Shown here in pieces: positions 4,021 through 36,973 of a stretch of 63,260 nucleotides of DNA (the stretch's first letter is position 1; each line of letters begins with the position of its first letter). A program made the position numbers and the translations under genes. The notes beneath the pieces are model-generated. The model saw nothing but the letters and a program-made list of their open reading frames with translations. It made no database searches and was not told the DNA's origin. Where the stretch lies: NCBI RefSeq assembly GCF_001194135.2, contig NC_068988.1, forward strand, positions 84,753,409 through 84,816,668, written 5' to 3'. This DNA is from Octopus bimaculoides (lineage: Eukaryota).

Positions 4021-4425
4021 TGATTCAAAAGTCCTAGTGTAGGAAGTTAGTAAGCTTCAAGCATGTAAAGAATTATTACAGATGACAAAAGGTGGACAAC
4101 ATATGATAAAAAGAGTTTATTTACCATTGTTAGTTACACATATTGTCCTATATTGAAATCAAAGGCAATTTTGATAAACTGACAATCGTCATTCAACTCA
4201 TTGTTTAGCAACTAAAGTTGCTAAAAATGTGAATAAAGGTACGAGATTGTAAGGGCCATGGAAAAGGTAAATAAAAACCTACAAATGATTCAAAGCTAAA
4301 ACAATGTTTGTTACATTACTTGTAACACATAAAACCCACTTAGGCAATCTTCAGGTCCTATTACCTTCAAGTTGTTTTACATTGTTGCATGGAGATGAGT
4401 AAAATATATATATATATATATATAT

Positions 4426-4562
4426 GGGCATCCAGCTGTAGAAACTCTGCCAGATCAGATTGGAGCCTGGTGCAGCCATCTGGTTCGCCACACCTCAGTC
4501 AAATCGTCCAACCCATGCTAGCATGGAAAGCGGACGTTAAATGATGATGATGATGATGATGT
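4426..4562 (+). mobile_element. RTE 3'-tail element (short 5'-truncated copy) ending in (GAT)n
   Basis: gggcatccagctgtagaaactctgcc...ccaacccatgctagcatggaaagcggacgttaaatgatgatg. The same tail ends the RTE at 26757-29150. Confidence 0.85.
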
Positions 4563-8089: not shown

Positions 8090-8721
8090 ATGAAGATCCG
8101 GCAAGACAAGTGAGATGCGTAAGAAGACCTGGCAAGCCTTGGTCTTATATCTAAATGCAAGGCCTTTGCCAGGGGTGTAGCCAGCCCACTTATGCATATC
8201 TTCCTTCATTGGACACTAAACTCCACTTGCAAAGACCTATTGAGGCAAGTGAAATCGAAATCGAGCTAAATTCGACGACTGGCACCCATGCCAACGTCGT
8301 CTCCTTCATTGGACACGAAACTTGGCTTGCAAAGACCTGTTGGGGCAAGCGAAAGCAAAATTGTGATGGCACCTGTGCCCAGCGTCGCCTTCCTAGCACT
8401 TGTGCCAGTGGCACATGTAAAGACATTCGAGAGAGATCGTTGCCAGTGCCGCTGGACTGGCTCCTGTGCAGGTGGCATGTAAAATACACCATTTTGAGCG
8501 TGGCCGTTGCCTGTACCGCCTGACTGGCTTTGTGCCGGTGGCACGTAAAAGCAGCCACTACACTCTCGGAGTGGTTGGCGTTAGGATGGACATCCAGCTG
8601 TTGAAACTCTGCCAAATCAGATTGGAGCCTGGTGTAGCCATCTGGTTTCACCAGTTCTCAGTCAAATCGTCCAACCTATGCTAGCATGGAAAGCGGACAT
8701 TAAACGATGATGATGATGATG
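8090..8721 (+). mobile_element. Long RTE-type 3'UTR copy with internal duplication
   Basis: Ends in the RTE tail (ccaacctatgctagcatggaaagcggacattaaacgatgatg). tccttcattggacac..aaact...cttgcaaagacct occurs twice (~8200, ~8302). ORFs called here have no recognisable product. Confidence 0.7.
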
Positions 8722-17734: not shown

Positions 17735-17955
17735 TGAATTGGCAGAAGCATAAGTCAGACAAAATACCATAGAGTATTTCTTTTGGTTCTCTACATTCTG
17801 AGTTCAAAACCTGTTGAGATTAATTTTAATTTCCATCTCTTAGTGGTCAATGAAAAAAAATGTGCCAATCAAGTCCTGGAGAGGCAGGAGTCAATGTAGT
17901 CAACTCACCCTCTCCCCCTAAAATTGTTGGCCTTGTGCCAAAATTTGAGACAATT
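17735..17955 (+). mobile_element. Family C SINE
   Basis: ttggcagaagc...ctgagttcaaaac...ggccttgtgccaaaatttgag followed by (ATT)n. Confidence 0.75.
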
Positions 17956-17981
17956 ATTATTAATATTATAATTACAATTAT

Positions 17982-18132
17982 TTGGCGTTAGGAAGGGCAT
18001 CCAGCTGTAGAAACTCTGCCAAATTAGATTGGAGTCTGGTGTAGCCATCCGGTTGCACCAGTCCTCAGTCAAATCGTCCAACCCATGCTAGCATGGACAG
18101 CGGACGTTAAACGATGATGATGATGATGATGA
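17982..18132 (+). mobile_element. RTE 3'-tail element ending in (GAT)n
   Basis: ttggcgttaggaagggcatccagctg...gcatggacagcggacgttaaacgatgatg. Confidence 0.85.
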
Positions 18133-26756: not shown

Positions 26757-29150
26757 ATATCATCATCATTATCATCCTTATTTAACATACGTGGTTCATG
26801 CTGGCATGAGTTGGATAGTTTGACCAGAGCTGGGAAGCCAGAGAGCTGCACCAGGCTCCAGTCTGAATTTAGTATGTTTTCTACAGCTGAATGCCCTTCT
26901 TAATGCCAACCACTTTTCTGAATGTGCTGGGCCTTTTACATAGCACCACACAGGTGCTTTTACATGGCACCACACTGGTGCTTTTATGTGGCATCACATG
27001 GTTGCTTTTAAGTGACATTGCTTGGGTACAATTATGTGGCACCACAAGGGCCCTTTTACATGACACCACATGAGTCCTTTTACATGGCACCACCATGAGT
27101 GCTTTTTATGTGACATCAGCACAGGACTGTAGCAGGTCAATCCTCTTCACCAGGGGGACTGAACTTAACACTTCTGCTATAGAGCACAGATATTCTTGAG
27201 TATAACAAGGTGCCAGAAATCCCAGTCCTTTGTCGTCTCACCTGAAAGGTTCAACATCTTGAGGTCATTCTTCAGTACTTTGTCCCTGGGTGTCCCACTT
27301 TCACATGTTCTATCAACTTTGACATCGGCACACTCTTTATGGAGCTGTTAGCACTCATCCACATCAGATGACCAAAGCAGTGCAATCTTCTCTCTTGCAA
27401 GCAACATCTAATTCTTCTTATGCCATACTTCTCTCCCAGTACACTAGCACTCTGCTGAACATGAACAATTACATTACATATACAACAGAGCATGCTAGCC
27501 TCATTCCTCCCTAACCTTTACATGTCCTCTGCATTCAAGGCCCACATCTCACTATCATGTAGAACTGTTATCCATATACATGCATCATACAATCTTTCTT
27601 TCACTTAAAGAGAGAAACCTTTCATAGCCAACAGAGGTAACAACTCTCTGAATTTCCTCCATGATATTCTTATTGTATCTATCACACTCTCTGTGCATCT
27701 TCCCCCACTACTAATTTGGTCTCCTAGGTAGTAGAAATTATCCACTACCTCTAATGAGCCATTAGAACATTTGAGAGAATCAATTTCCAAAGTCTCTGTA
27801 GTTTTTATGGATCCTGTGCATCTTCCACATACAAACACTACCTTCTCAGATAGCTTTCCTATTAATCCACTGCACCTCTTGTGTCTCCATAGCTTACACA
27901 GCATACACCATATGGAGTTCCTGCCAACACCTTTCCTACAAATCAAGCAGAGCCACCTGCCTGAAGGAGTTGGGTTTGGTCCTGTCTATTTTCTTGCTTA
28001 CTAGTCTTTGCTAAGTTAACCTTAATGCCCTTAGATTGCAGGTTTTGCTTCCACACCTGGAATTTCTCTTCTAATTCTGATATGGAATCTGCTGAAGGCA
28101 AGATCATCAACATATAGTAGTTTCCAGGGGCTGCCTGTCTTGAATTCCTCTGTTATAGCCAGGCGGACAATGACGAAAAGAAGAGGAATGAGGAGTGAAC
28201 CTTGATGAACCCCTACCTATACACCAAATTCTTCACTGTACTTGTGGTTAACTCTCACCTTACTGACAGCATCTCTATATATGGTCTGTACAGCTTTCAC
28301 CAGCCACTTGTGTATCCTAAACTTCTTCAAAGTCTACCATATCACACAGCAGGGAACTCTATTGAAGGCTTTCTCTAGATCAATGAATGCCAAGTATAAT
28401 GTTCTATTCTTAGCTAAGTATTTCTCTTGAAGTTGCCTGTCTGTGTAAATAGTGTCAGTAGTGCTTCTCTCCCAGATGAAGCTTAACTGCATTTCATCTA
28501 GCCTAATTTTGCTCCTAATTAAGTGGGCTATAACACTCTCTGTAATTTTTATCGTCTGGTCCAGGAGTTTGATGCCTCTATAATTGCTTCTATCTAAAGC
28601 ATCACCCTTACCCTTGTAGGAGCTAACAATTATTCTGCTGTGCCAGTCACTTCCTGAATGACCTAATTAACTATGTGGGTGACTAGCCCGTATCCTACCT
28701 TACTGGATATTTTGAGCATCTCAACTGTGATTCTGGATGGAGCAGGGTCTTTCCCGGTTTTCATGTTTTTAATTGCCTTATCTACCATACTGATGTTCAC
28801 TAGGATAGCTGGTTCTTCTGTTGGGTTCTCATGACTGAGACTCCCTTTATCCCATTCATTCTCTAAATTCAGCAGTCTCACATAGTAACTTTTCCACACC
28901 TCTCTCTTGTCTAATTCACTAAGTGCAACCATGCCATTATCTCTCTTACAATATCTTGATTCTCACTGACACACAGGCTAGCTATCTGGAACACTGCAAG
29001 TATCTGATTTTCATGCTGTAGGACATAGGCAAACTTCTTTTCTGCTTCTAACCTGGCTAGATAAACCTGATGTCTAGCCTCCTTTTTAATTTTCTGATAT
29101 GATTCTTTGCTATCCCCCTCTTTTTCATTCCTTCCAGACCTGTCTCTTCT
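26757..29150 (-). mobile_element. RTE-clade LINE (copy 2) with RT, C-terminus, 3'UTR and (GAT)n tail
   Basis: GKDPAPSRITVEMLK, ICRKGVGRNSIWCMLCKLWRHKRCSGL, WRKFRELLPLLAMKG, QERRLHCFGHLMWM. The ORF ends near 27170 and is followed by a 3'UTR with a ~23-bp tandem expansion (26930-27115) and the shared tail. Confidence 0.9.
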
Positions 29151-29469
29151 CTTTTATGGCCCTGTCAACATCACTGTTCTACAACCATGTTACCCTTGGC
29201 CTGGTAGAGATTTTGCTCCAACCACAGATTTGATCTGTTGCTATGTCTTCCTCATAAACTTCAATTTTGGCATGGTTTTTTACAGCTGGATACACTTCCT
29301 ATCACCAACCGTTTTACAGAGTGTACTGGCTACATTTTATCACATCACCAGCATGGTTTGCTTGTATCCTGCATGACAAAAGTGGTAGGAGGCATACTGC
29401 TCTACAGTACCTCCATTAACTCAGGATATGATCAACAGAATGAGAAGAGTTTGTGTTTACAGAAATGAA

Positions 29470-30300
29470 CTATTGTGAGAGGGTGAAAGAAGTGAGAGAA
29501 TAATAAATGAGGCAAAGTGATTGAGTGAGAATGTGGAAGAAGGAGGGATGAGAGAGAACAAGATAGCACTACAAGGAATAATGGATGTGGTTATATGTTT
29601 GCAGTTAAGTGGGTGTGAAGGGGGTGTATTGGATACCAGCAGTTTTAATGTAATATTCGTCTTTCTCAACATTTCGGTCAACATACACCACCTCATTCTT
29701 ACCACCTCCATCCACTACACACACACTGACTCACACTCATACCTCAGTTTCTCCTCCTCCCACCCTACACACACCAAGCTCTCCATCCCCTACTTCCAAT
29801 TCCTCCGTCTGTGCAGGCTCTGCAGTGACAACCATGACTTTGAGACTCAGTCTCAACTGATGGCTTACCACTTCATACTTTGTGAATATCCCCTCACCAC
29901 TTTCCACACCACTTTCCACACCACTTTCCACACCATCCTTGCCAGAGCATGTTCCATGGACCGTGCCTCTGCTCTCTCTCCCCACACCCACCCCGCTGTT
30001 ATCCATCTCCCATTTCCCCTCACCTACCACCCCTCCACTCTGCCTCTCCAATACCCCATTCTCCAAGAGACACTAATTGCTTCGAGGTGTGAGAGAGATT
30101 GTGATGGGTAGTTATAGAAATGATTGGTGGCAGTAAGAAAGTGTGATGGATACCAGTAATGTGCGACCAGGAGGAGTGCTAGCAGTATAGATGTGTAGTG
30201 TCATATGTACGAGAGAACAAGAGTCATAAATAGCCAAGATGGTGATTGTAAGAAAGTGATGGATGTCAATAAGAGTGACCAAGTGAGGAAAGAAGGTGGG
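29470..30300 (-). mobile_element. Very degenerate C/T-rich LINE-like remnant hosting the PLE duplicate
   Basis: Flanks of 29661-30067 read on the minus strand as weak APE-like peptides (LIDIHH..., LVSNTPPSHP). Low similarity. Confidence 0.3.
29661..30067 (+). repeat. Near-identical partial duplicate of the PLE RT (32020-32402)
   Basis: By manual alignment, 5 substitutions in 383 bp plus two extra copies of the 12-mer cactttccacac. Confidence 0.95.
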
Positions 30301-30333
30301 GTGCGTGTGTGTGTGTATCTATCTGTTTGTCTG

Positions 30334-30384
<51 letters not shown>

Positions 30385-30390
30385 GTCTAT

Positions 30391-30424
<34 letters not shown>

Positions 30425-30480
30425 CTCTTGTAAAAAACATAAATTTGAAAGATTAAGCACATTCTAAGATGTAGAGCAGT

Positions 30481-30664
30481 ATATATTAAAATTGGGGAAG
30501 GCTGGTTTATGGGATTACTTTAGGTTTCCCGTCCGTAAAGGGTTTAGCTTTGTGGCGTATCATCAGATCCCAAAAACCTGTTATGCCATAAAGCTAAACC
30601 CTTTATGGATGGGGAACCTAAGGTAATCTCATAAATCGGGTGGCCTTCCCCAATTTTAATATAT
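30481..30664 (+). other. 184-bp foldback / MITE-like palindrome
   Basis: Arms 30481-30559 and 30582-30664 with a 22-nt loop. 79 pairs = 70 Watson-Crick + 9 G-T, one 4-nt bulge, ATATAT termini. Confidence 0.95.
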
Positions 30665-30687
30665 TATCATCATCATCATCATTTAAC

Positions 30688-30723
<36 letters not shown>

Positions 30724-30724
30724 C

Positions 30725-32930
30725 TCCTCCCCACATACACTTACCCCTCCTCTCTCTCCTCCCAGCCTTCCACTACCCCACCACCTCTTCCACATCTGAT
30801 CCATTCACCCCCGCCCCACTTCAATCTGTTGTTGCCATTCCTCCTGATCTTCCCCTCTCTGAGGCGAAACGCTCTCTTTTCAGTNNNNNNNNNNNNNNNN
30901 NNNNNNNNNNNNNNNNNNNNNNNNNNNNNNNNNNNNNNNNNNNNNNNNNNNNNNNNNNNNNNNNNNNNNNNNNNNNNNNNNNNNNNNNNNNNNNNNNNNN
31001 NNNNNNNNNNNNNNNNNNNNNNNNNNNNNNNNNNNNNNNNNNNNNNNNNNNNNNNNNNNNNNNNNNNNNNNNNNNNNNNNNNNNNNNNNNNNNNNNNNNN
31101 NNNNNNNNNNNNNNNNNNNNNNNNNNNNNNNNNNNNNNNNNNNNNNNNNNNNNNNNNNNNNNNNNNNNNNNNNNNNNNNNNNNNNNNNNNNNNNNNNNNN
31201 NNNNNNNNNNNNNNNNNNNNNNNNNNNNNNNNNNNNNNNNNNNNNNNNNNNNNNNNNNNNNNNNNNNNNNNNNNNNNNNNNNNNNNNNNNNNNNNNNNNN
31301 NNNNNNNNNNNNNNNNNNNNNNNNNNNNNNCTCCTCCTGCTCCCTCCCACCGCCTCCAACCTCATTGTCTGCACTCCTCGCACCCCCACCATTTACTTCC
31401 TTCCCAAAATCCACAAATCCAACAATCCTGGCCGCTCCATTGTCTCTGCCTGTAACTGCCTCATGGAACTCATCTCTAAATACCTTGACTGTGTCCTTGC
31501 CTCCCTAGTGGCTTCCCTCCCCTTACACATCCATGACACTAACCATGCTCTTCGTCTTTTCAACTCTTTCTCCTTCCTTCCTGGCCCCTCTAAACTTCTC
31601 TTCACTCTTGATATCAAGAGTCTATATATGGTGATCCCACAACACAAAGGACTTCTTGCTCTGAAACACTACCTAGACCTTCGACCTAACTCGCAACCTG
31701 ACATGTCCACACTTCTTCATCTGGCCGAACTTGTTCTCTCCCTTACCTGCTTCTCATTCGCGGGGGAGTTTTACTAACAGGTCTCGGGAGTGGCCATGAA
31801 AACAAGAATGGGCCCCAACTATGTGAACCTGTTTGTTGGCTATGTTGAGGCCCAAATATTATCAAGATTCACTGGTCCTACTCCCGAACTATATGGCTGT
31901 TATATTGATGACTGTATCGGTACAACCTCGCTCTCCCATGAACAACTAGACTCCTTCCTCTCTTTTGTCCAATCTTTCCATCCTGCCCTCGAATTCTCCA
32001 TTTCCAACACTTCCATCATCTTTCTCAACATTTCGGTCAACATACATCACCTCATTCTCACCACCTCCATCCACTACACACACACTGACTCACACTCATA
32101 CCTCAGTTTCTCCTCCTCCCACCCTACACACACCAAGCTCTCCATCCCCTACTTCCAATTCCTCCGTCTGTGCAGGCTCTGCAGTGACAACCATGACTTT
32201 GAGACTCAGTCTCAACTGATGGCTTACCACTTCATACTTTGTGAATATCCCCTCACCACTTTCCACACCATCCTTGCCAGAGCATGTTCCATGGACCGTG
32301 CCTCTGCTCTCTCTCCCCACACCCACCCTGCTATTATCCATCTCCCATTTCCCCTCACCTACCACCCCTCCACCCTGCCTCTCCAATACCCCATTCTCCA
32401 AGCCTTCTGGTTACTCCATTCTGACCCCTCCACTTCACACATCTTCCCCAACCTACCACTCCCATCCTTTCAACAAGCCCACAACCTACGTGACCTCCTG
32501 GTCTACAATTTCTTCCCTAACCCCACCTCCCAGCCTGGCTTGTTCCCCTGCTCCCACCCATGCTGCTGCACTTACCCCTACCTCTCCAACACCACCATCC
32601 TCACAGGCACCCATCATCATCCCTATCATATCACTGACTCCTTTACATGCACTTCTTGCAATGTCATTTACTGCATCTCCTGCTCTTTCTGTCCTTCTCT
32701 GTACATTAGTCAAACAGGACGCCGCTTGGCTGACCAGTTTGCGGAGCACCTCTGAGACATTAGACTTGGCAACGACACCCCAGTCTCATGCCACTTCTGC
32801 TCTACTGGTCATTCGTTACAACACCTGTCTGTATTTGGACTGTTTTTGCACAGGGGCCATCTGACCTCCCACTATGCCGTGAACAGGAATTATTCTTCTC
32901 TCTTCTCTCCTTTGTGCCACATGGGCTCAA
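30725..32930 (+). mobile_element. Penelope-like element (Neptune-type), RT plus GIY-YIG endonuclease, decayed
   Basis: IPPDLPLSEAKRSL before the gap. Then IYFLPKIHKSNNPGRSIVSACNC, LFTLDIKSLY, QVSGVAMKTRMGPNYVNLF, YIDDCIG, a Cys-rich linker, and NVIYCISCSFCPSLYISQTGRRL..F.EH. Stops at 31775-31777 and 32753-32755, frameshift near 32875. Confidence 0.9.
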
Positions 32931-33991
32931 ATCCCCTCCTCTCTTCATCTGATTCCCTTCCTCTCTCCTCTCTTCATCTCACACCTACTTCCTCTCTTCA
33001 CTCCTACCCACCTTCTACTTCATTGTTACCCCCTCTGTCCACATCCCACCCCTACACATCCGGACTCACCATCCCAACACATCCAAACCCCACCATCTCA
33101 ATACATCTCAGCCCCATCACCCCACCCACCCACACCTCNNNNNNNNNNNNNNNNNNNNNNNNNNNNNNNNNNNNNNNNNNNNNNNNNNNNNNNNNNNNNN
33201 NNNNNNNNNNNNNNNNNNNNNNNNNNNNNNNNNNNNNNNNNNNNNNNNNNNNNNNNNNNNNNNNNNNNNNNNNNNNNNNNNNNNNNNNNNNNNNNNNNNN
33301 NNNNNNNNNNNNNNNNNNNNNNNNNNNNNNNNNNNNNNNNNNNNNNNNNNNNNNNNNNNNNNNNNNNNNNNNNNNNNNNNNNNNNNNNNNNNNNNNNNNN
33401 NNNNNNNNNNNNNNNNNNNNNNNNNNNNNNNNNNNNNNNNNNNNNNNNNNNNNNNNNNNNNNNNNNNNNNNNNNNNNNNNNNNNNNNNNNNNNNNNNNNN
33501 NNNNNNNNNNNNNNNNNNNNNNNNNNNNNNNNNNNNNNNNNNNNNNNNNNNNNNNNNNNNNNNNNNNNNNNNNNNNNNNNNNNNNNNNNNNNNNNNNNNN
33601 NNNNNNNNNNNNNNNNNNNNNNNNNNNNNNNNNNNNNNNNNNNNNNNNNNNNNNNNNNNNNNNNNNNNNNNNNNNNNNNNNNNNNNNNNNNNNNNNNNNN
33701 NNNNNNNNNNNNNNNNNNNNNNNNNNNNNNNNNNNNNNNNNNNNNNNNNNNNNNNNNNNNNNNNNNNNNNNNNNNNNNNNNNNNNNNNNNNNNNNNNNNN
33801 NNNNNNNNNNNNNNNNNNNNNNNNNNNNNNNNNNNNNNNNNNNNNNNNNNNNNNNNNNNNNNNNNNNNNNNNNNNNNNNNNNNNNNNNNNNNNNNNNNNN
33901 NNNNNNNNNNNNNNNNNNNNNNNNNNNNNNNNNNNNNNNNNNNNNNNNNNNNNNNNNNNNNNNNNNNNNNNNNNNNNNNNNNNNNNNNNNN

Positions 33992-36317: not shown

Positions 36318-36343
36318 CTGAATTGTTTTTCTCTTTATTGCAG
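36316..36343 (+). promoter_or_regulatory. Splice acceptor of the Di-Ras coding exon
   Basis: Polypyrimidine tract tttctgaattgtttttctctttattgCAG, AG at 36342-36343, 33 nt upstream of the ATG. Confidence 0.8.
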
Positions 36344-36376
36344 GCATCAAAGGATCGGTCAGTGCGACTTCGAGTG

Positions 36377-36973
36377 ATGCCAGAGCAGAGCAATGACTAC
36401 AGAGTGGTAGTGTTTGGTGCAGGGGGTGTGGGAAAGAGTTCCCTCGTTCTCAGATTTGTACGAGGGACATTCCGCGAAAGCTACATCCCAACAATTGAAG
36501 ACACTTATCGGCAAGTTATCAGCTGCAACAAACAAGTGTGCACGCTGCAAATCACGGACACAACGGGCAGCCATCAGTTCCCCGCCATGCAGCGCCTATC
36601 CATTTCAAAAGGACACGCCTTCATTTTGGTCTACTCTATCACAAGCAGGCAATCGCTGGAAGAGCTTAAGCCAATATTCAGTGAAATTACAGAGATCAAA
36701 GGAGACGTTGACAGCATCCCAATCATGCTGGTGGGCAACAAGTGCGACGAAACTAGTCGTGAGGTGACTCAGAACGTAGGAGCTGAACTGGCCAAACGCT
36801 GGAACTGTGCCTATCTCGAAACTTCAGCAAAGACAAATCACAATGTGAAGGAACTATTCCAAGAACTGTTGCAGTTGGAGAAGAGAAGAACTATGAGCCT
36901 GCAACTGGAGACAAAGAAAACAAAATCCCAGAAACGCAAGGAGAAGTTAAAGGGGAAATGTGTTGTTATGTAA
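36377..36973 (+). CDS. DIRAS: Di-Ras family small GTPase (198 aa), uninterrupted CDS
   Basis: [21 protein letters not shown] (G1), YIPTIEDTY (G2), the Di-Ras-diagnostic DTTGSHQF (G3), NKCD (G4), ETSAK (G5), a polybasic tail and CAAX CVVM. Purine at -3. No orthology to DIRAS1 versus DIRAS2 is claimed. Confidence 0.97.

What the first reader, a model, noticed from the sequence alone, without database searches (positions are those of the whole stretch)
30481..30664. 79-bp foldback in which every mismatch is a G-U wobble on the + strand
Seen: a near-perfect inverted repeat with 70 WC pairs, 9 G-T pairs (6 G-T, 3 T-G), no A-C pairs and no transversions, a 4-nt bulge and a 22-nt loop. If transitions hit either strand at random, all nine falling in one class has probability about 2 x 0.5^9, or 0.004. 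The + strand is the sense strand of both Di-Ras (acceptor 5.7 kb downstream) and the adjacent PLE, so a + transcript would form a long uninterrupted duplex. Inference, three models: (a) selection to keep a + strand RNA or ssDNA hairpin (hpRNA, miRNA-like precursor or ADAR-recruiting duplex; coleoids are known for very heavy A-to-I editing); (b) a fossil of A-to-G edited RNA that was reverse-transcribed and inserted; (c) strand-biased C-to-T deamination. Four of the 9 sites fit CpG contexts, and 3 of 9 would have a 5' G, which ADAR disfavours, so (b) is not the favoured model.
Basis: partly seen in the sequence, partly recalled or inferred. Interest (0 to 1): 0.72.

Follow-up and report, generated by a model that had tools for sequence, protein, structure and literature searches.

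The report
Wobble-only long hairpin in octopus intron
A 184-base palindrome, present in Octopus bimaculoides but missing from three other octopods, lies in an intron of the Di-Ras2 gene and folds only on the transcribed strand into an unbroken 79-pair stem; the one-sided mismatch pattern is real and hard to get by chance, but its cause could not be settled without genome-wide copies or RNA reads.

Summary
Window 30481-30664 (Octopus bimaculoides chromosome CM046608.1) folds on the + strand into 79 consecutive pairs: 70 Watson-Crick and 9 G:U, with no A:C and no transversion. It has a 4-nt bulge and a 22-nt loop.

With the substitution spectrum measured in this same intron, chance gives about 1e-4 to 5e-4.

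The + strand is the sense strand of Di-Ras2, so the hairpin is intronic.

The hairpin is young or unstable. It is absent from the orthologous intron of O. vulgaris, O. sinensis and Argonauta hians. It lies inside a 5.9-kb O. bimaculoides-only block of LINE, PLE, SINE and microsatellite debris, within a TA tract. I found no second copy in about 230 kb of octopod DNA.

A SINE-polarised control shows no regional strand-biased mutation (74 versus 76). An ADAR-edited retrocopy would require the reverse of ADAR's neighbour preference (p = 0.005).

Best reading, at 0.4: a TE-like palindromic insertion whose + strand pairing has been kept by selection on a single-stranded, probably RNA, form. Chance remains a serious rival.

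No reads, small RNAs or family copies could be examined.

The parts
30481..30559 (+). 5' arm of the foldback (79 nt). It carries six G and three T of the nine wobble pairs: G30505, G30512, G30531, G30535, G30552, G30557, T30503, T30519, T30527.
30560..30581 (+). 22-nt non-palindromic loop, TCATCAGATCCCAAAAACCTGT. The - strand reads CTGATGA, but no hammerhead ribozyme is detected.
30582..30664 (+). 3' arm (83 nt) with the 4-nt bulge GGGT at 30638-30641. It carries T30584, T30589, T30606, T30610, T30629, T30636, G30614, G30622, G30642.
30316..30424 (+). Neighbouring palindromic microsatellite, (ATCT)18 facing (AGAT)8. All of its variant units (GTTT, GTCT, GTCT, GTCT) are + strand A>G or C>T, so they are also wobble-compatible.
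30665..30688 (-). 3' end of the abundant octopus SINE (CGTTAAA plus a (TGA)5 tail on the - strand). It is truncated after 7 nt and abuts the right end of the hairpin.
30689..30722 (.). (TA)17 tract. Together with TATATAT at 30480-30486 and ATATAT at 30659-30664, it shows that the hairpin sits inside a TA microsatellite.
30723..33041 (+). Degenerate Penelope-like element (RT plus GIY-YIG, with in-frame stops and one assembly gap), in the same orientation as the hairpin. It is absent from O. vulgaris and O. sinensis.
27117..33041 (.). O. bimaculoides-only block of about 5.9 kb. It holds a LINE fragment on the - strand, a PLE fragment at 29657-30067, microsatellites, the hairpin, the SINE stub and the PLE. 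Its two flanks lie 2 bp apart in O. vulgaris (L004 36622/36625).
36342..36973 (+). Di-Ras2 coding exon; the splice acceptor is at 36341/36342. The upstream coding exon lies outside the window (L003 1906-2040), so the hairpin lies in this intron in the sense orientation.

Best explanation
The feature is a lineage-specific, transposon-like palindromic insertion: two 79-bp arms around a 22-nt core, lodged in a TA microsatellite in the large intron of Di-Ras2 in Octopus bimaculoides.

It lies in the sense orientation of the gene. It is therefore presumably transcribed as part of the pre-mRNA, and the + strand RNA can close into an uninterrupted 79-pair duplex.

The arms differ only by changes that keep a pair on that strand (G:C to G:U, or A:U to G:U). 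Ordinary mutational input, including CpG>TpG, seems to have been filtered. Changes that would give A:C or transversion mismatches on the + strand have not survived.

I infer purifying selection on a single-stranded + strand form, most probably RNA. It acted either in a source family before this copy was inserted or in place.

The likely activity of such an RNA is that of a long hairpin dsRNA, a substrate for ADAR and/or Dicer (hpRNA-like).

Shown: the anatomy, the strand, the intronic position, the lineage specificity, the non-randomness, and the absence of a regional mutation bias.

Inferred: transcription of the hairpin itself, selection, and any processing.
For: - 79 consecutive pairs on the + strand with 9 G:U, 0 A:C and 0 transversions; 30 kcal/mol more stable than the - strand.
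- Chance probability is 8e-5 to 8e-4 under the transition share (0.65) measured in this intron.
- The thirteen other inverted repeats of the locus carry transversions, and all but one short one also carry A:C.
- There is no regional strand asymmetry of mutation: SINE-polarised + strand changes are 74 wobble-making against 76 mismatch-making.
- 4 of 9 sites are CpG>TpG with the partner CpG intact. This is ordinary mutational input; only its A:C-making mirror image is missing.
- The + strand is the Di-Ras2 sense strand and the hairpin is intronic.
- ADAR demonstrably acts on this transcript: all 11 differences between RNA contig L002 and the genome are A>G.
- Rfam covariance models score the + strand higher than the - strand.
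Against: - There is no conservation. The hairpin is absent from the orthologous intron in O. vulgaris, O. sinensis and Argonauta hians. An old organismal function is therefore excluded.
- It sits in TE and microsatellite debris.
- If it arose as a perfect palindrome after the species split, the five non-CpG wobbles are more than expected under constraint: 1.6 expected, P = 0.025.
- No second copy was found in about 230 kb, so a source family is hypothetical.
- No transcription, small-RNA or editing data could be obtained for the hairpin.
- The pattern was noticed after the fact in a scan of unknown size.
Confidence: 0.4

Rival explanations
1. Chance extreme. A neutral, decaying TE-derived or fold-back palindrome happened to accumulate nine transitions of the same class, and it was picked out because a scan of many windows looks at many hairpins.
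For: - It is lineage-specific and lies in junk DNA.
- The arm divergence (9 of 79 pairs) fits unconstrained decay since about the species split: 5.5 expected, P(>=9) = 0.11.
- No family, no known RNA family and no conservation were found.
- An octopus genome holds very many inverted repeats, so a few such extremes must exist.
Against: - The nominal probability is 8e-5 to 8e-4 per hairpin.
- It is the only long near-perfect foldback in the 63-kb window.
- The favoured strand is also the transcribed one.
- The neighbouring microsatellite palindrome shows the same direction of change.
Confidence: 0.3
2. A local strand-specific mutational process. The + (non-template) strand of this structure-prone tract, which runs (GT)n, (ATCT)n/(AGAT)n, foldback, (TA)n, is unusually exposed, for example in R-loops or as a single-stranded intermediate. 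It suffers C>T and A>G deamination far above background.
For: - All nine changes are + strand C>T or A>G, with no transversions.
- 4 of 9 are at CpG.
- All interruptions of the adjacent (ATCT)n are + strand A>G or C>T.
- A raised local rate would remove the time problem.
- The other inverted repeats lean mildly towards G:T, 39 against 23, p = 0.056.
Against: - The SINE-polarised control shows no asymmetry across the gene, 74 against 76.
- Unpolarised A<>G and C<>T counts against O. vulgaris and O. sinensis are balanced.
- Bases in a stem are paired and so protected from deamination.
- The microsatellite changes are mostly A>G, whereas hydrolytic deamination is mostly C>T (established chemistry).
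Confidence: 0.12
3. Fossil of ADAR editing. A perfect hairpin RNA was hyper-edited (A to I), reverse-transcribed by a PLE or LINE enzyme and inserted, so that every mismatch is an A>G on the RNA strand.
For: - It gives one-step production of a G:U-only pattern without transversions and removes the time problem.
- The site lies between retroelements of the same orientation.
- ADAR heavily edits this locus's transcript.
Against: - The neighbour context is the reverse of ADAR's. The putative edited A's have 5' G3, C3, T2 and A1, against T18, A17, G4 and C3 for unedited stem A's; Fisher p = 0.005.
- The 11 genuine edited sites nearby have no 5' G.
- There is no poly(A) or own tail. The (ATC)5 beside the hairpin belongs to a SINE stub.
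- No parent copy was found.
Confidence: 0.05
4. A canonical microRNA gene: a mir-9/mir-79-like or other conserved pre-miRNA.
For: The mir-9 covariance model gives 38.1 bits and shares CAUAAAGCUA with the 3p consensus.
Against: - The score is below the family gathering score of 58.6.
- The - strand scores 32 bits, so most of the score is generic hairpin.
- A 79-bp stem is far longer than a pre-miRNA stem.
- The hairpin is absent from other octopods, whereas mir-9 is ancient.
Confidence: 0.03

Closest known systems
MADE1 / hsa-mir-548 type palindromic MITEs (mariner-derived, TA target), which become hairpins when read through in introns
   Same: - It is a short element made almost wholly of two inverted arms.
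- It lies in a TA-rich target, inside an intron, in the sense of the host gene.
- It is lineage-specific.
- It can form a long RNA hairpin.
   Different: - It is 184 bp with 79-bp arms, against about 80 bp for MADE1.
- No family copies, no clear TSD and no transposase partner were found.
- A strand-specific wobble-only signature is not, to my knowledge, a described property of MITEs.
Drosophila hpRNA loci (long inverted-repeat transcripts processed by Dicer-2 into endo-siRNAs)
   Same: - It is a long, nearly perfect intramolecular duplex on one strand, with G:U tolerated.
- It is evolutionarily young.
   Different: - hpRNA arms derive from, and target, specific genes and are usually several hundred bp. 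No target or small RNA is known here.
- It is intronic rather than a separate transcription unit.
Inverted Alu pairs and other intronic inverted repeats that serve as ADAR substrates
   Same: - It is an intronic sense-strand dsRNA in a transcript that is demonstrably A-to-I edited.
   Different: - It is a single compact foldback rather than two separate repeat copies.
- Inverted Alu pairs show no pairing-preserving substitution bias.
Genomic fossils of RNA-edited retroelements (A>G clusters in retrocopies)
   Same: - The changes are one-directional, transition-only differences on the RNA-sense strand.
   Different: - The neighbour preference is reversed relative to ADAR.
- There is no retroposition hallmark.
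PLE-associated hammerhead ribozymes and metazoan retrozymes (rod-like RNAs mobilised by PLEs)
   Same: - It is adjacent to a PLE, has a rod-like fold of about 180 nt, and has a CTGATGA box on the - strand.
   Different: - No hammerhead is detected even at E <= 10.
- There is no tandem arrangement.
- The strand that folds best is the opposite one.

Membership tests
MITE (non-autonomous DNA transposon) | Terminal inverted repeats | tested here: met
   The arms at 30481-30559 and 30582-30664 are complementary over 79 positions. This is trivially met by any palindrome.
MITE (non-autonomous DNA transposon) | Target-site duplication of defined length | tested here: inconclusive
   The ends lie in TATATAT and ATATAT. 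TA, TTAA and AATT are all compatible because the termini are themselves palindromic.
MITE (non-autonomous DNA transposon) | Multiple dispersed copies in the genome | tested here: inconclusive
   There is no second copy in about 90 kb of O. bimaculoides, 115 kb of O. vulgaris and O. sinensis, or 25 kb of Argonauta. The whole genome could not be searched.
MITE (non-autonomous DNA transposon) | Empty site at the orthologous position in a relative | tested here: inconclusive
   The hairpin is absent in O. vulgaris and O. sinensis. However, the whole 5.9-kb block around it is absent too, so no clean empty site exists.
hpRNA / endo-siRNA locus | Long intramolecular duplex on a transcribed strand | tested here: met
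   The + strand forms a 79-bp stem, and it is the sense strand of the intron-containing Di-Ras2 pre-mRNA. Transcription of the hairpin itself is inferred.
hpRNA / endo-siRNA locus | About 21-nt Dicer-dependent small RNAs from the stem, and a complementary target | not testable with these tools
The miRNA paper's supplements hold no sequences.
Rfam miRNA families (mir-9, MIR2670, MIR400 and others) | Score at or above the family gathering threshold | tested here: not met
   mir-9 scores 38.1 against 58.6, MIR2670 66.6 against 117, and MIR400 42 against 83.
Hammerhead ribozyme / retrozyme | Conserved catalytic core with helices I-III | tested here: not met
   There is no Hammerhead model hit at E <= 10 on either strand. 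Only an isolated CTGATGA is present on the - strand.
ADAR-edited retrocopy | A>G-only changes with the ADAR neighbour signature (5' G depleted) | tested here: not met
   Three of 9 sites have a 5' G. A 5' G or C is enriched, at 6 of 9 against 7 of 42, p = 0.005. The local genuine editing sites have a 5' G in 0 of 11.
Conserved structured RNA | Orthologues with preserved pairing or compensatory changes | tested here: not met
   No orthologue exists in O. vulgaris, O. sinensis or Argonauta hians.

The most novel reading that the evidence does not exclude
A species-specific, newly born hairpin-RNA gene inside a neuronal gene's intron. Selection would hold the 79-bp duplex together on the transcript because it is used, either as a source of endo-siRNAs or as a local ADAR-binding duplex, in an animal lineage where hpRNAs have not been described and where ADAR activity is exceptionally high.
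Probability: 0.12. Interest if true: 0.7.

Novelty: new member of a known kind. Interest (0 to 1): 0.38.

Why it matters
A one-sided, wobble-only mismatch pattern is a cheap, sequence-only signal that a palindrome has mattered as a single strand, and it says which strand.

If the signal is real here, it marks a very young structured RNA, or a hairpin-dependent mobile element, in a cephalopod. This is a group noted for massive A-to-I editing and a burst of new small-RNA genes.

It would also give a concrete locus at which to test how new dsRNA substrates arise from transposon debris. If it is a chance extreme, it calibrates how often such patterns turn up in repeat-rich genomes.

Tried and rejected
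Read evidence:
There is therefore no evidence on transcription, small RNAs, editing or DNA-copy variants.

Searches for other copies:
- blastn and nhmmer on the window and on all fetched octopod loci found nothing.
- The 52-aa ORF through the hairpin found no candidate among 5.8 billion proteins.
- The same ORF against 1.84 billion representatives gave only chance hits: bacterial surface proteins built of many copies of a short repeat, and one unrelated tandem-repeat ORF.
- Exact ORFs flanking the hairpin are not in the protein collection.
- Pattern scans of metagenome, viral and prokaryote collections found only Acidobacteria palindromes that share the 13-nt termini by chance.

Is the hairpin part of the PLE?
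- The PLE protein search returned nothing closer than 54-72% identity and nothing from octopus. The 5' region of the family could therefore not be compared.
- No second copy lies at the other PLE fragment.

Other leads:
- Hammerhead or retrozyme: rejected.
- mir-9 homology: sub-threshold.
- Transposase or other domains in the flanks: none in Pfam.
- Base-composition skew as a sign of transcription-coupled bias: uninformative, because TEs dominate it.
- Other Di-Ras clusters as a way to sample more octopus DNA: none were cephalopod.
- The supplements of the octopus miRNA paper hold no precursor sequences, so the negative search there means nothing.

Full report
**1.

- The + strand of window 30481-30664 folds into one stem of 79 consecutive pairs. 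There are 70 Watson-Crick, 6 G-T and 3 T-G pairs, with no A-C pair and no transversion.
- The 3' arm has a 4-nt bulge (GGGT, 30638-30641). The loop is 22 nt (30560-30581).
- As RNA the + strand has an MFE of -125.6 kcal/mol (z = -17.6). The - strand, where the nine sites become A:C mismatches, reaches -95.0 kcal/mol.

**2. Where the window comes from**

- A look-up of the annotated Di-Ras2 protein returned three chromosome-level loci.
- The window is 100% identical to Octopus bimaculoides GCA_001194135.2, chromosome CM046608.1 (L003).
- L004 and L005 are the orthologous loci of O. vulgaris and O. sinensis. L007 is that of Argonauta hians.
- An RNA contig (L002, Logan assembly of SRR32601320) joins an upstream coding exon (L003 1906-2040, outside the window) to window 36342.
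- The acceptor is therefore at 36341/36342, 5.7 kb downstream of the hairpin. The hairpin lies in the Di-Ras2 intron in the sense orientation.
- The neighbouring PLE ORF is also on the + strand.

**3. How unlikely the pattern is**

- About 18 kb of this intron aligns to O. vulgaris and about 16 kb to O. sinensis. Substitution divergence is about 7%, and 65% of differences are transitions.
- Under a strand-symmetric neutral model, the chance that nine arm differences are all transitions of the class that leaves a G:T on one strand is 0.325^9 = 4e-5. For either strand it is 8e-5.
- It is 4.5e-4 if the four CpG sites are taken as certain transitions, and 7.7e-4 if the two sites flanking the indel are excluded.
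- Thirteen other inverted repeats in the same loci contain transversions, and all but one short one also contain A:C pairs. Without orthologous duplicates the totals are G:T 39 and A:C 23.
- The hairpin is a real outlier. The pattern was, however, noticed after the fact in a scan whose size I do not know.

**4. It is not conserved**

- Neither blastn (word size 7-9) nor nhmmer finds any relative of the hairpin in 115 kb of O. vulgaris and O. sinensis or in 25 kb of Argonauta. None is found elsewhere in about 90 kb of O. bimaculoides either.
- Orthology with O. vulgaris runs up to about window 27066-27116 and resumes at 33042. The two points are 2 bp apart in O. vulgaris (L004 36622/36625).
- The hairpin therefore lies in a 5.9-kb O. 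bimaculoides-only block. The block contains, in order:
  - a LINE fragment on the - strand;
  - a 411-bp internal PLE fragment (29657-30067, 93% identical to 32016-32402);
  - unclassified sequence;
  - (GT)n and a palindromic (ATCT)n/(AGAT)n microsatellite;
  - 56 bp of unique sequence;
  - the hairpin;
  - a SINE 3' stub;
  - (TA)17;
  - a degenerate RT plus GIY-YIG PLE (30723-33041).
- The ends of the hairpin are embedded in TA repeats (TATATAT on the left, ATATAT then (TA)17 on the right). This fits insertion into a TA microsatellite but leaves the target duplication undecidable.
- I could not tell whether the block is a set of insertions in O. bimaculoides or a deletion in the O. vulgaris/O. 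sinensis lineage.

**5.

*Model (c), strand-biased mutation.*
- I polarised substitutions in 16 copies of the abundant SINE of this locus against their consensus and expressed them on the gene's + strand.
- Counts are A>G 18, C>T 44 + 12 (non-CpG + CpG), T>C 26 and G>A 34 + 16. That is 74 wobble-making against 76 mismatch-making changes (p = 0.93).
- The unpolarised comparison between species is also balanced.
- There is no regional bias. A bias confined to this structure-prone tract cannot be excluded: all interruptions of the adjacent (ATCT)n are + strand A>G or C>T.

*Model (b), edited RNA copied back into DNA.*
- If the nine G's were edited A's, their 5' neighbours would be G3, C3, T2 and A1. 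The 43 unedited stem A's have T18, A17, G4 and C3.
- Preference for a 5' G or C has p = 0.005. This is the reverse of the established ADAR preference.
- A local yardstick exists. All 11 differences between RNA contig L002 and the genome are A>G: three recoding sites in the CDS, seven in the 3' UTR and one in the 5' exon. None has a 5' G.
- ADAR is therefore clearly active on this transcript, but the hairpin's wobbles do not look like its footprint.

*Model (a), pairing kept on the + strand.*
- The input looks like ordinary mutation. 4 of 9 sites are CpG>TpG with the partner CpG on the other arm still intact.
- The equally likely CpG>CpA, all other A:C-making transitions and all transversions are missing.
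- That is what a filter on + strand pairing would leave.
- The difficulty is time. If a perfect palindrome formed after the split from O. vulgaris (branch of about 3.5%), only 1.6 pair-preserving non-CpG transitions are expected in 71 pairs, against 5 seen (P = 0.025). Unconstrained decay would give about 5.5 differences of all kinds.
- Three ways out remain: the sequence was shaped before it arrived here (a source family or an older locus), the block is older than the split, or the local rate is raised.

**6. What it is not**

- Rfam gives only sub-threshold matches to long-hairpin miRNA models: MIR2670 66.6 against 117, MIR400 42 against 83, and mir-9 38.1 against 58.6. The - strand also scores 32 bits for mir-9.
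- The shared CAUAAAGCUA with the mir-9-3p consensus is a curiosity.
- No hammerhead is found even at E <= 10, despite a CTGATGA on the - strand next to a PLE. It is not a PLE ribozyme or retrozyme.
- The flanking ORFs have no transposase or other informative Pfam domain.
- The 52-aa ORF through the hairpin has no homologue. The few HMMER hits are bacterial surface proteins built of many copies of a short repeat and an unrelated tandem-repeat ORF.
- Bacterial palindromes that share the 13-nt termini are unrelated inside.

**7. Verdict**

- What is there is a young, TE-like palindromic insertion in a TA tract of the Di-Ras2 intron. It is co-oriented with the gene and able to form a 79-bp dsRNA in the pre-mRNA.
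- The wobble-only pattern is genuine and is explained neither by regional mutation bias nor by ADAR retro-copying.
- I rank the explanations as follows:
  - selection on a + strand single-stranded (RNA) form: 0.4;
  - chance extreme: 0.3;
  - a local strand-specific mutational process: 0.12;
  - an ADAR fossil: 0.05;
  - a canonical miRNA: 0.03.
- Its most likely activity, if any, is as a long hairpin dsRNA bound by ADAR and/or cut by Dicer. That step is inference only.
They are genome-wide copies, small-RNA and total-RNA reads, and the sister-species locus.

Noticed in passing
window 36521, 36836, 36849, 37087, 37103, 37107, 37119, 37129, 37161, 37163; L003 1944: All 11 differences between the Logan RNA contig L002 (SRR32601320) and the genome are genomic A read as G. 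Three of them recode Di-Ras2 (S>G, N>D, K>R) and seven cluster in the 3' UTR. The 5' neighbours are T6, C3, A2 and G0. This looks like heavy A-to-I editing of this transcript.
   Followed up: partly
window 30316-30424: A palindromic microsatellite, (ATCT)18 facing (AGAT)8. Its four variant units (GTTT, GTCT, GTCT at 30325-30336 and GTCT at 30385-30388) are all + strand A>G or C>T, the same wobble-compatible direction as in the hairpin.
   Followed up: partly
window 30665-30688: (ATC)5 followed by TTTAACG is the 3' end of the abundant octopus SINE in minus orientation. It is truncated after 7 nt and lies directly against the hairpin, followed by (TA)17. Full copies lie at about 4330-4560, 8480-8720 and 17900-18130, among others.
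   Followed up: partly
window 27117-33041: A 5.9-kb block is present in O. bimaculoides but absent from O. vulgaris and O. sinensis, where the flanks lie 2 bp apart. Whether it arose by insertions or was lost by a deletion is not resolved.
   Followed up: partly
window 29657-30067 and 32016-32402: A 411-bp internal piece of the PLE is duplicated upstream at 93% identity, without the rest of the element.
   Followed up: no
window 13703: ATGCAGATGTTAAAAG followed by GT encodes MQMLK, the alternative first coding exon of Di-Ras2 isoform X2. The hairpin is intronic for both isoforms.
   Followed up: no
window 30587-30596: The 3' arm reads CAUAAAGCUA, identical to the start of the mir-9/mir-79 3p consensus in Rfam. 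The model score is 38.1 bits, below the gathering score of 58.6.
   Followed up: yes
L001 1865-2016; L006 7812-7983: Acidobacteria contigs carry roughly 150-170-bp palindromes that begin and end with the same 13 nt (AATTGGGGAAGGC) as the octopus hairpin. In L001 the interior is unrelated, so the match is chance; L006 was not inspected. They look like a bacterial repeated palindromic element.
   Followed up: no
window 26884-27116: A roughly 24-bp minisatellite (units like CACATGAGTCCTTTTACATGGCAC) lies at the left edge of the lineage-specific block. The number of units differs between species.
   Followed up: no
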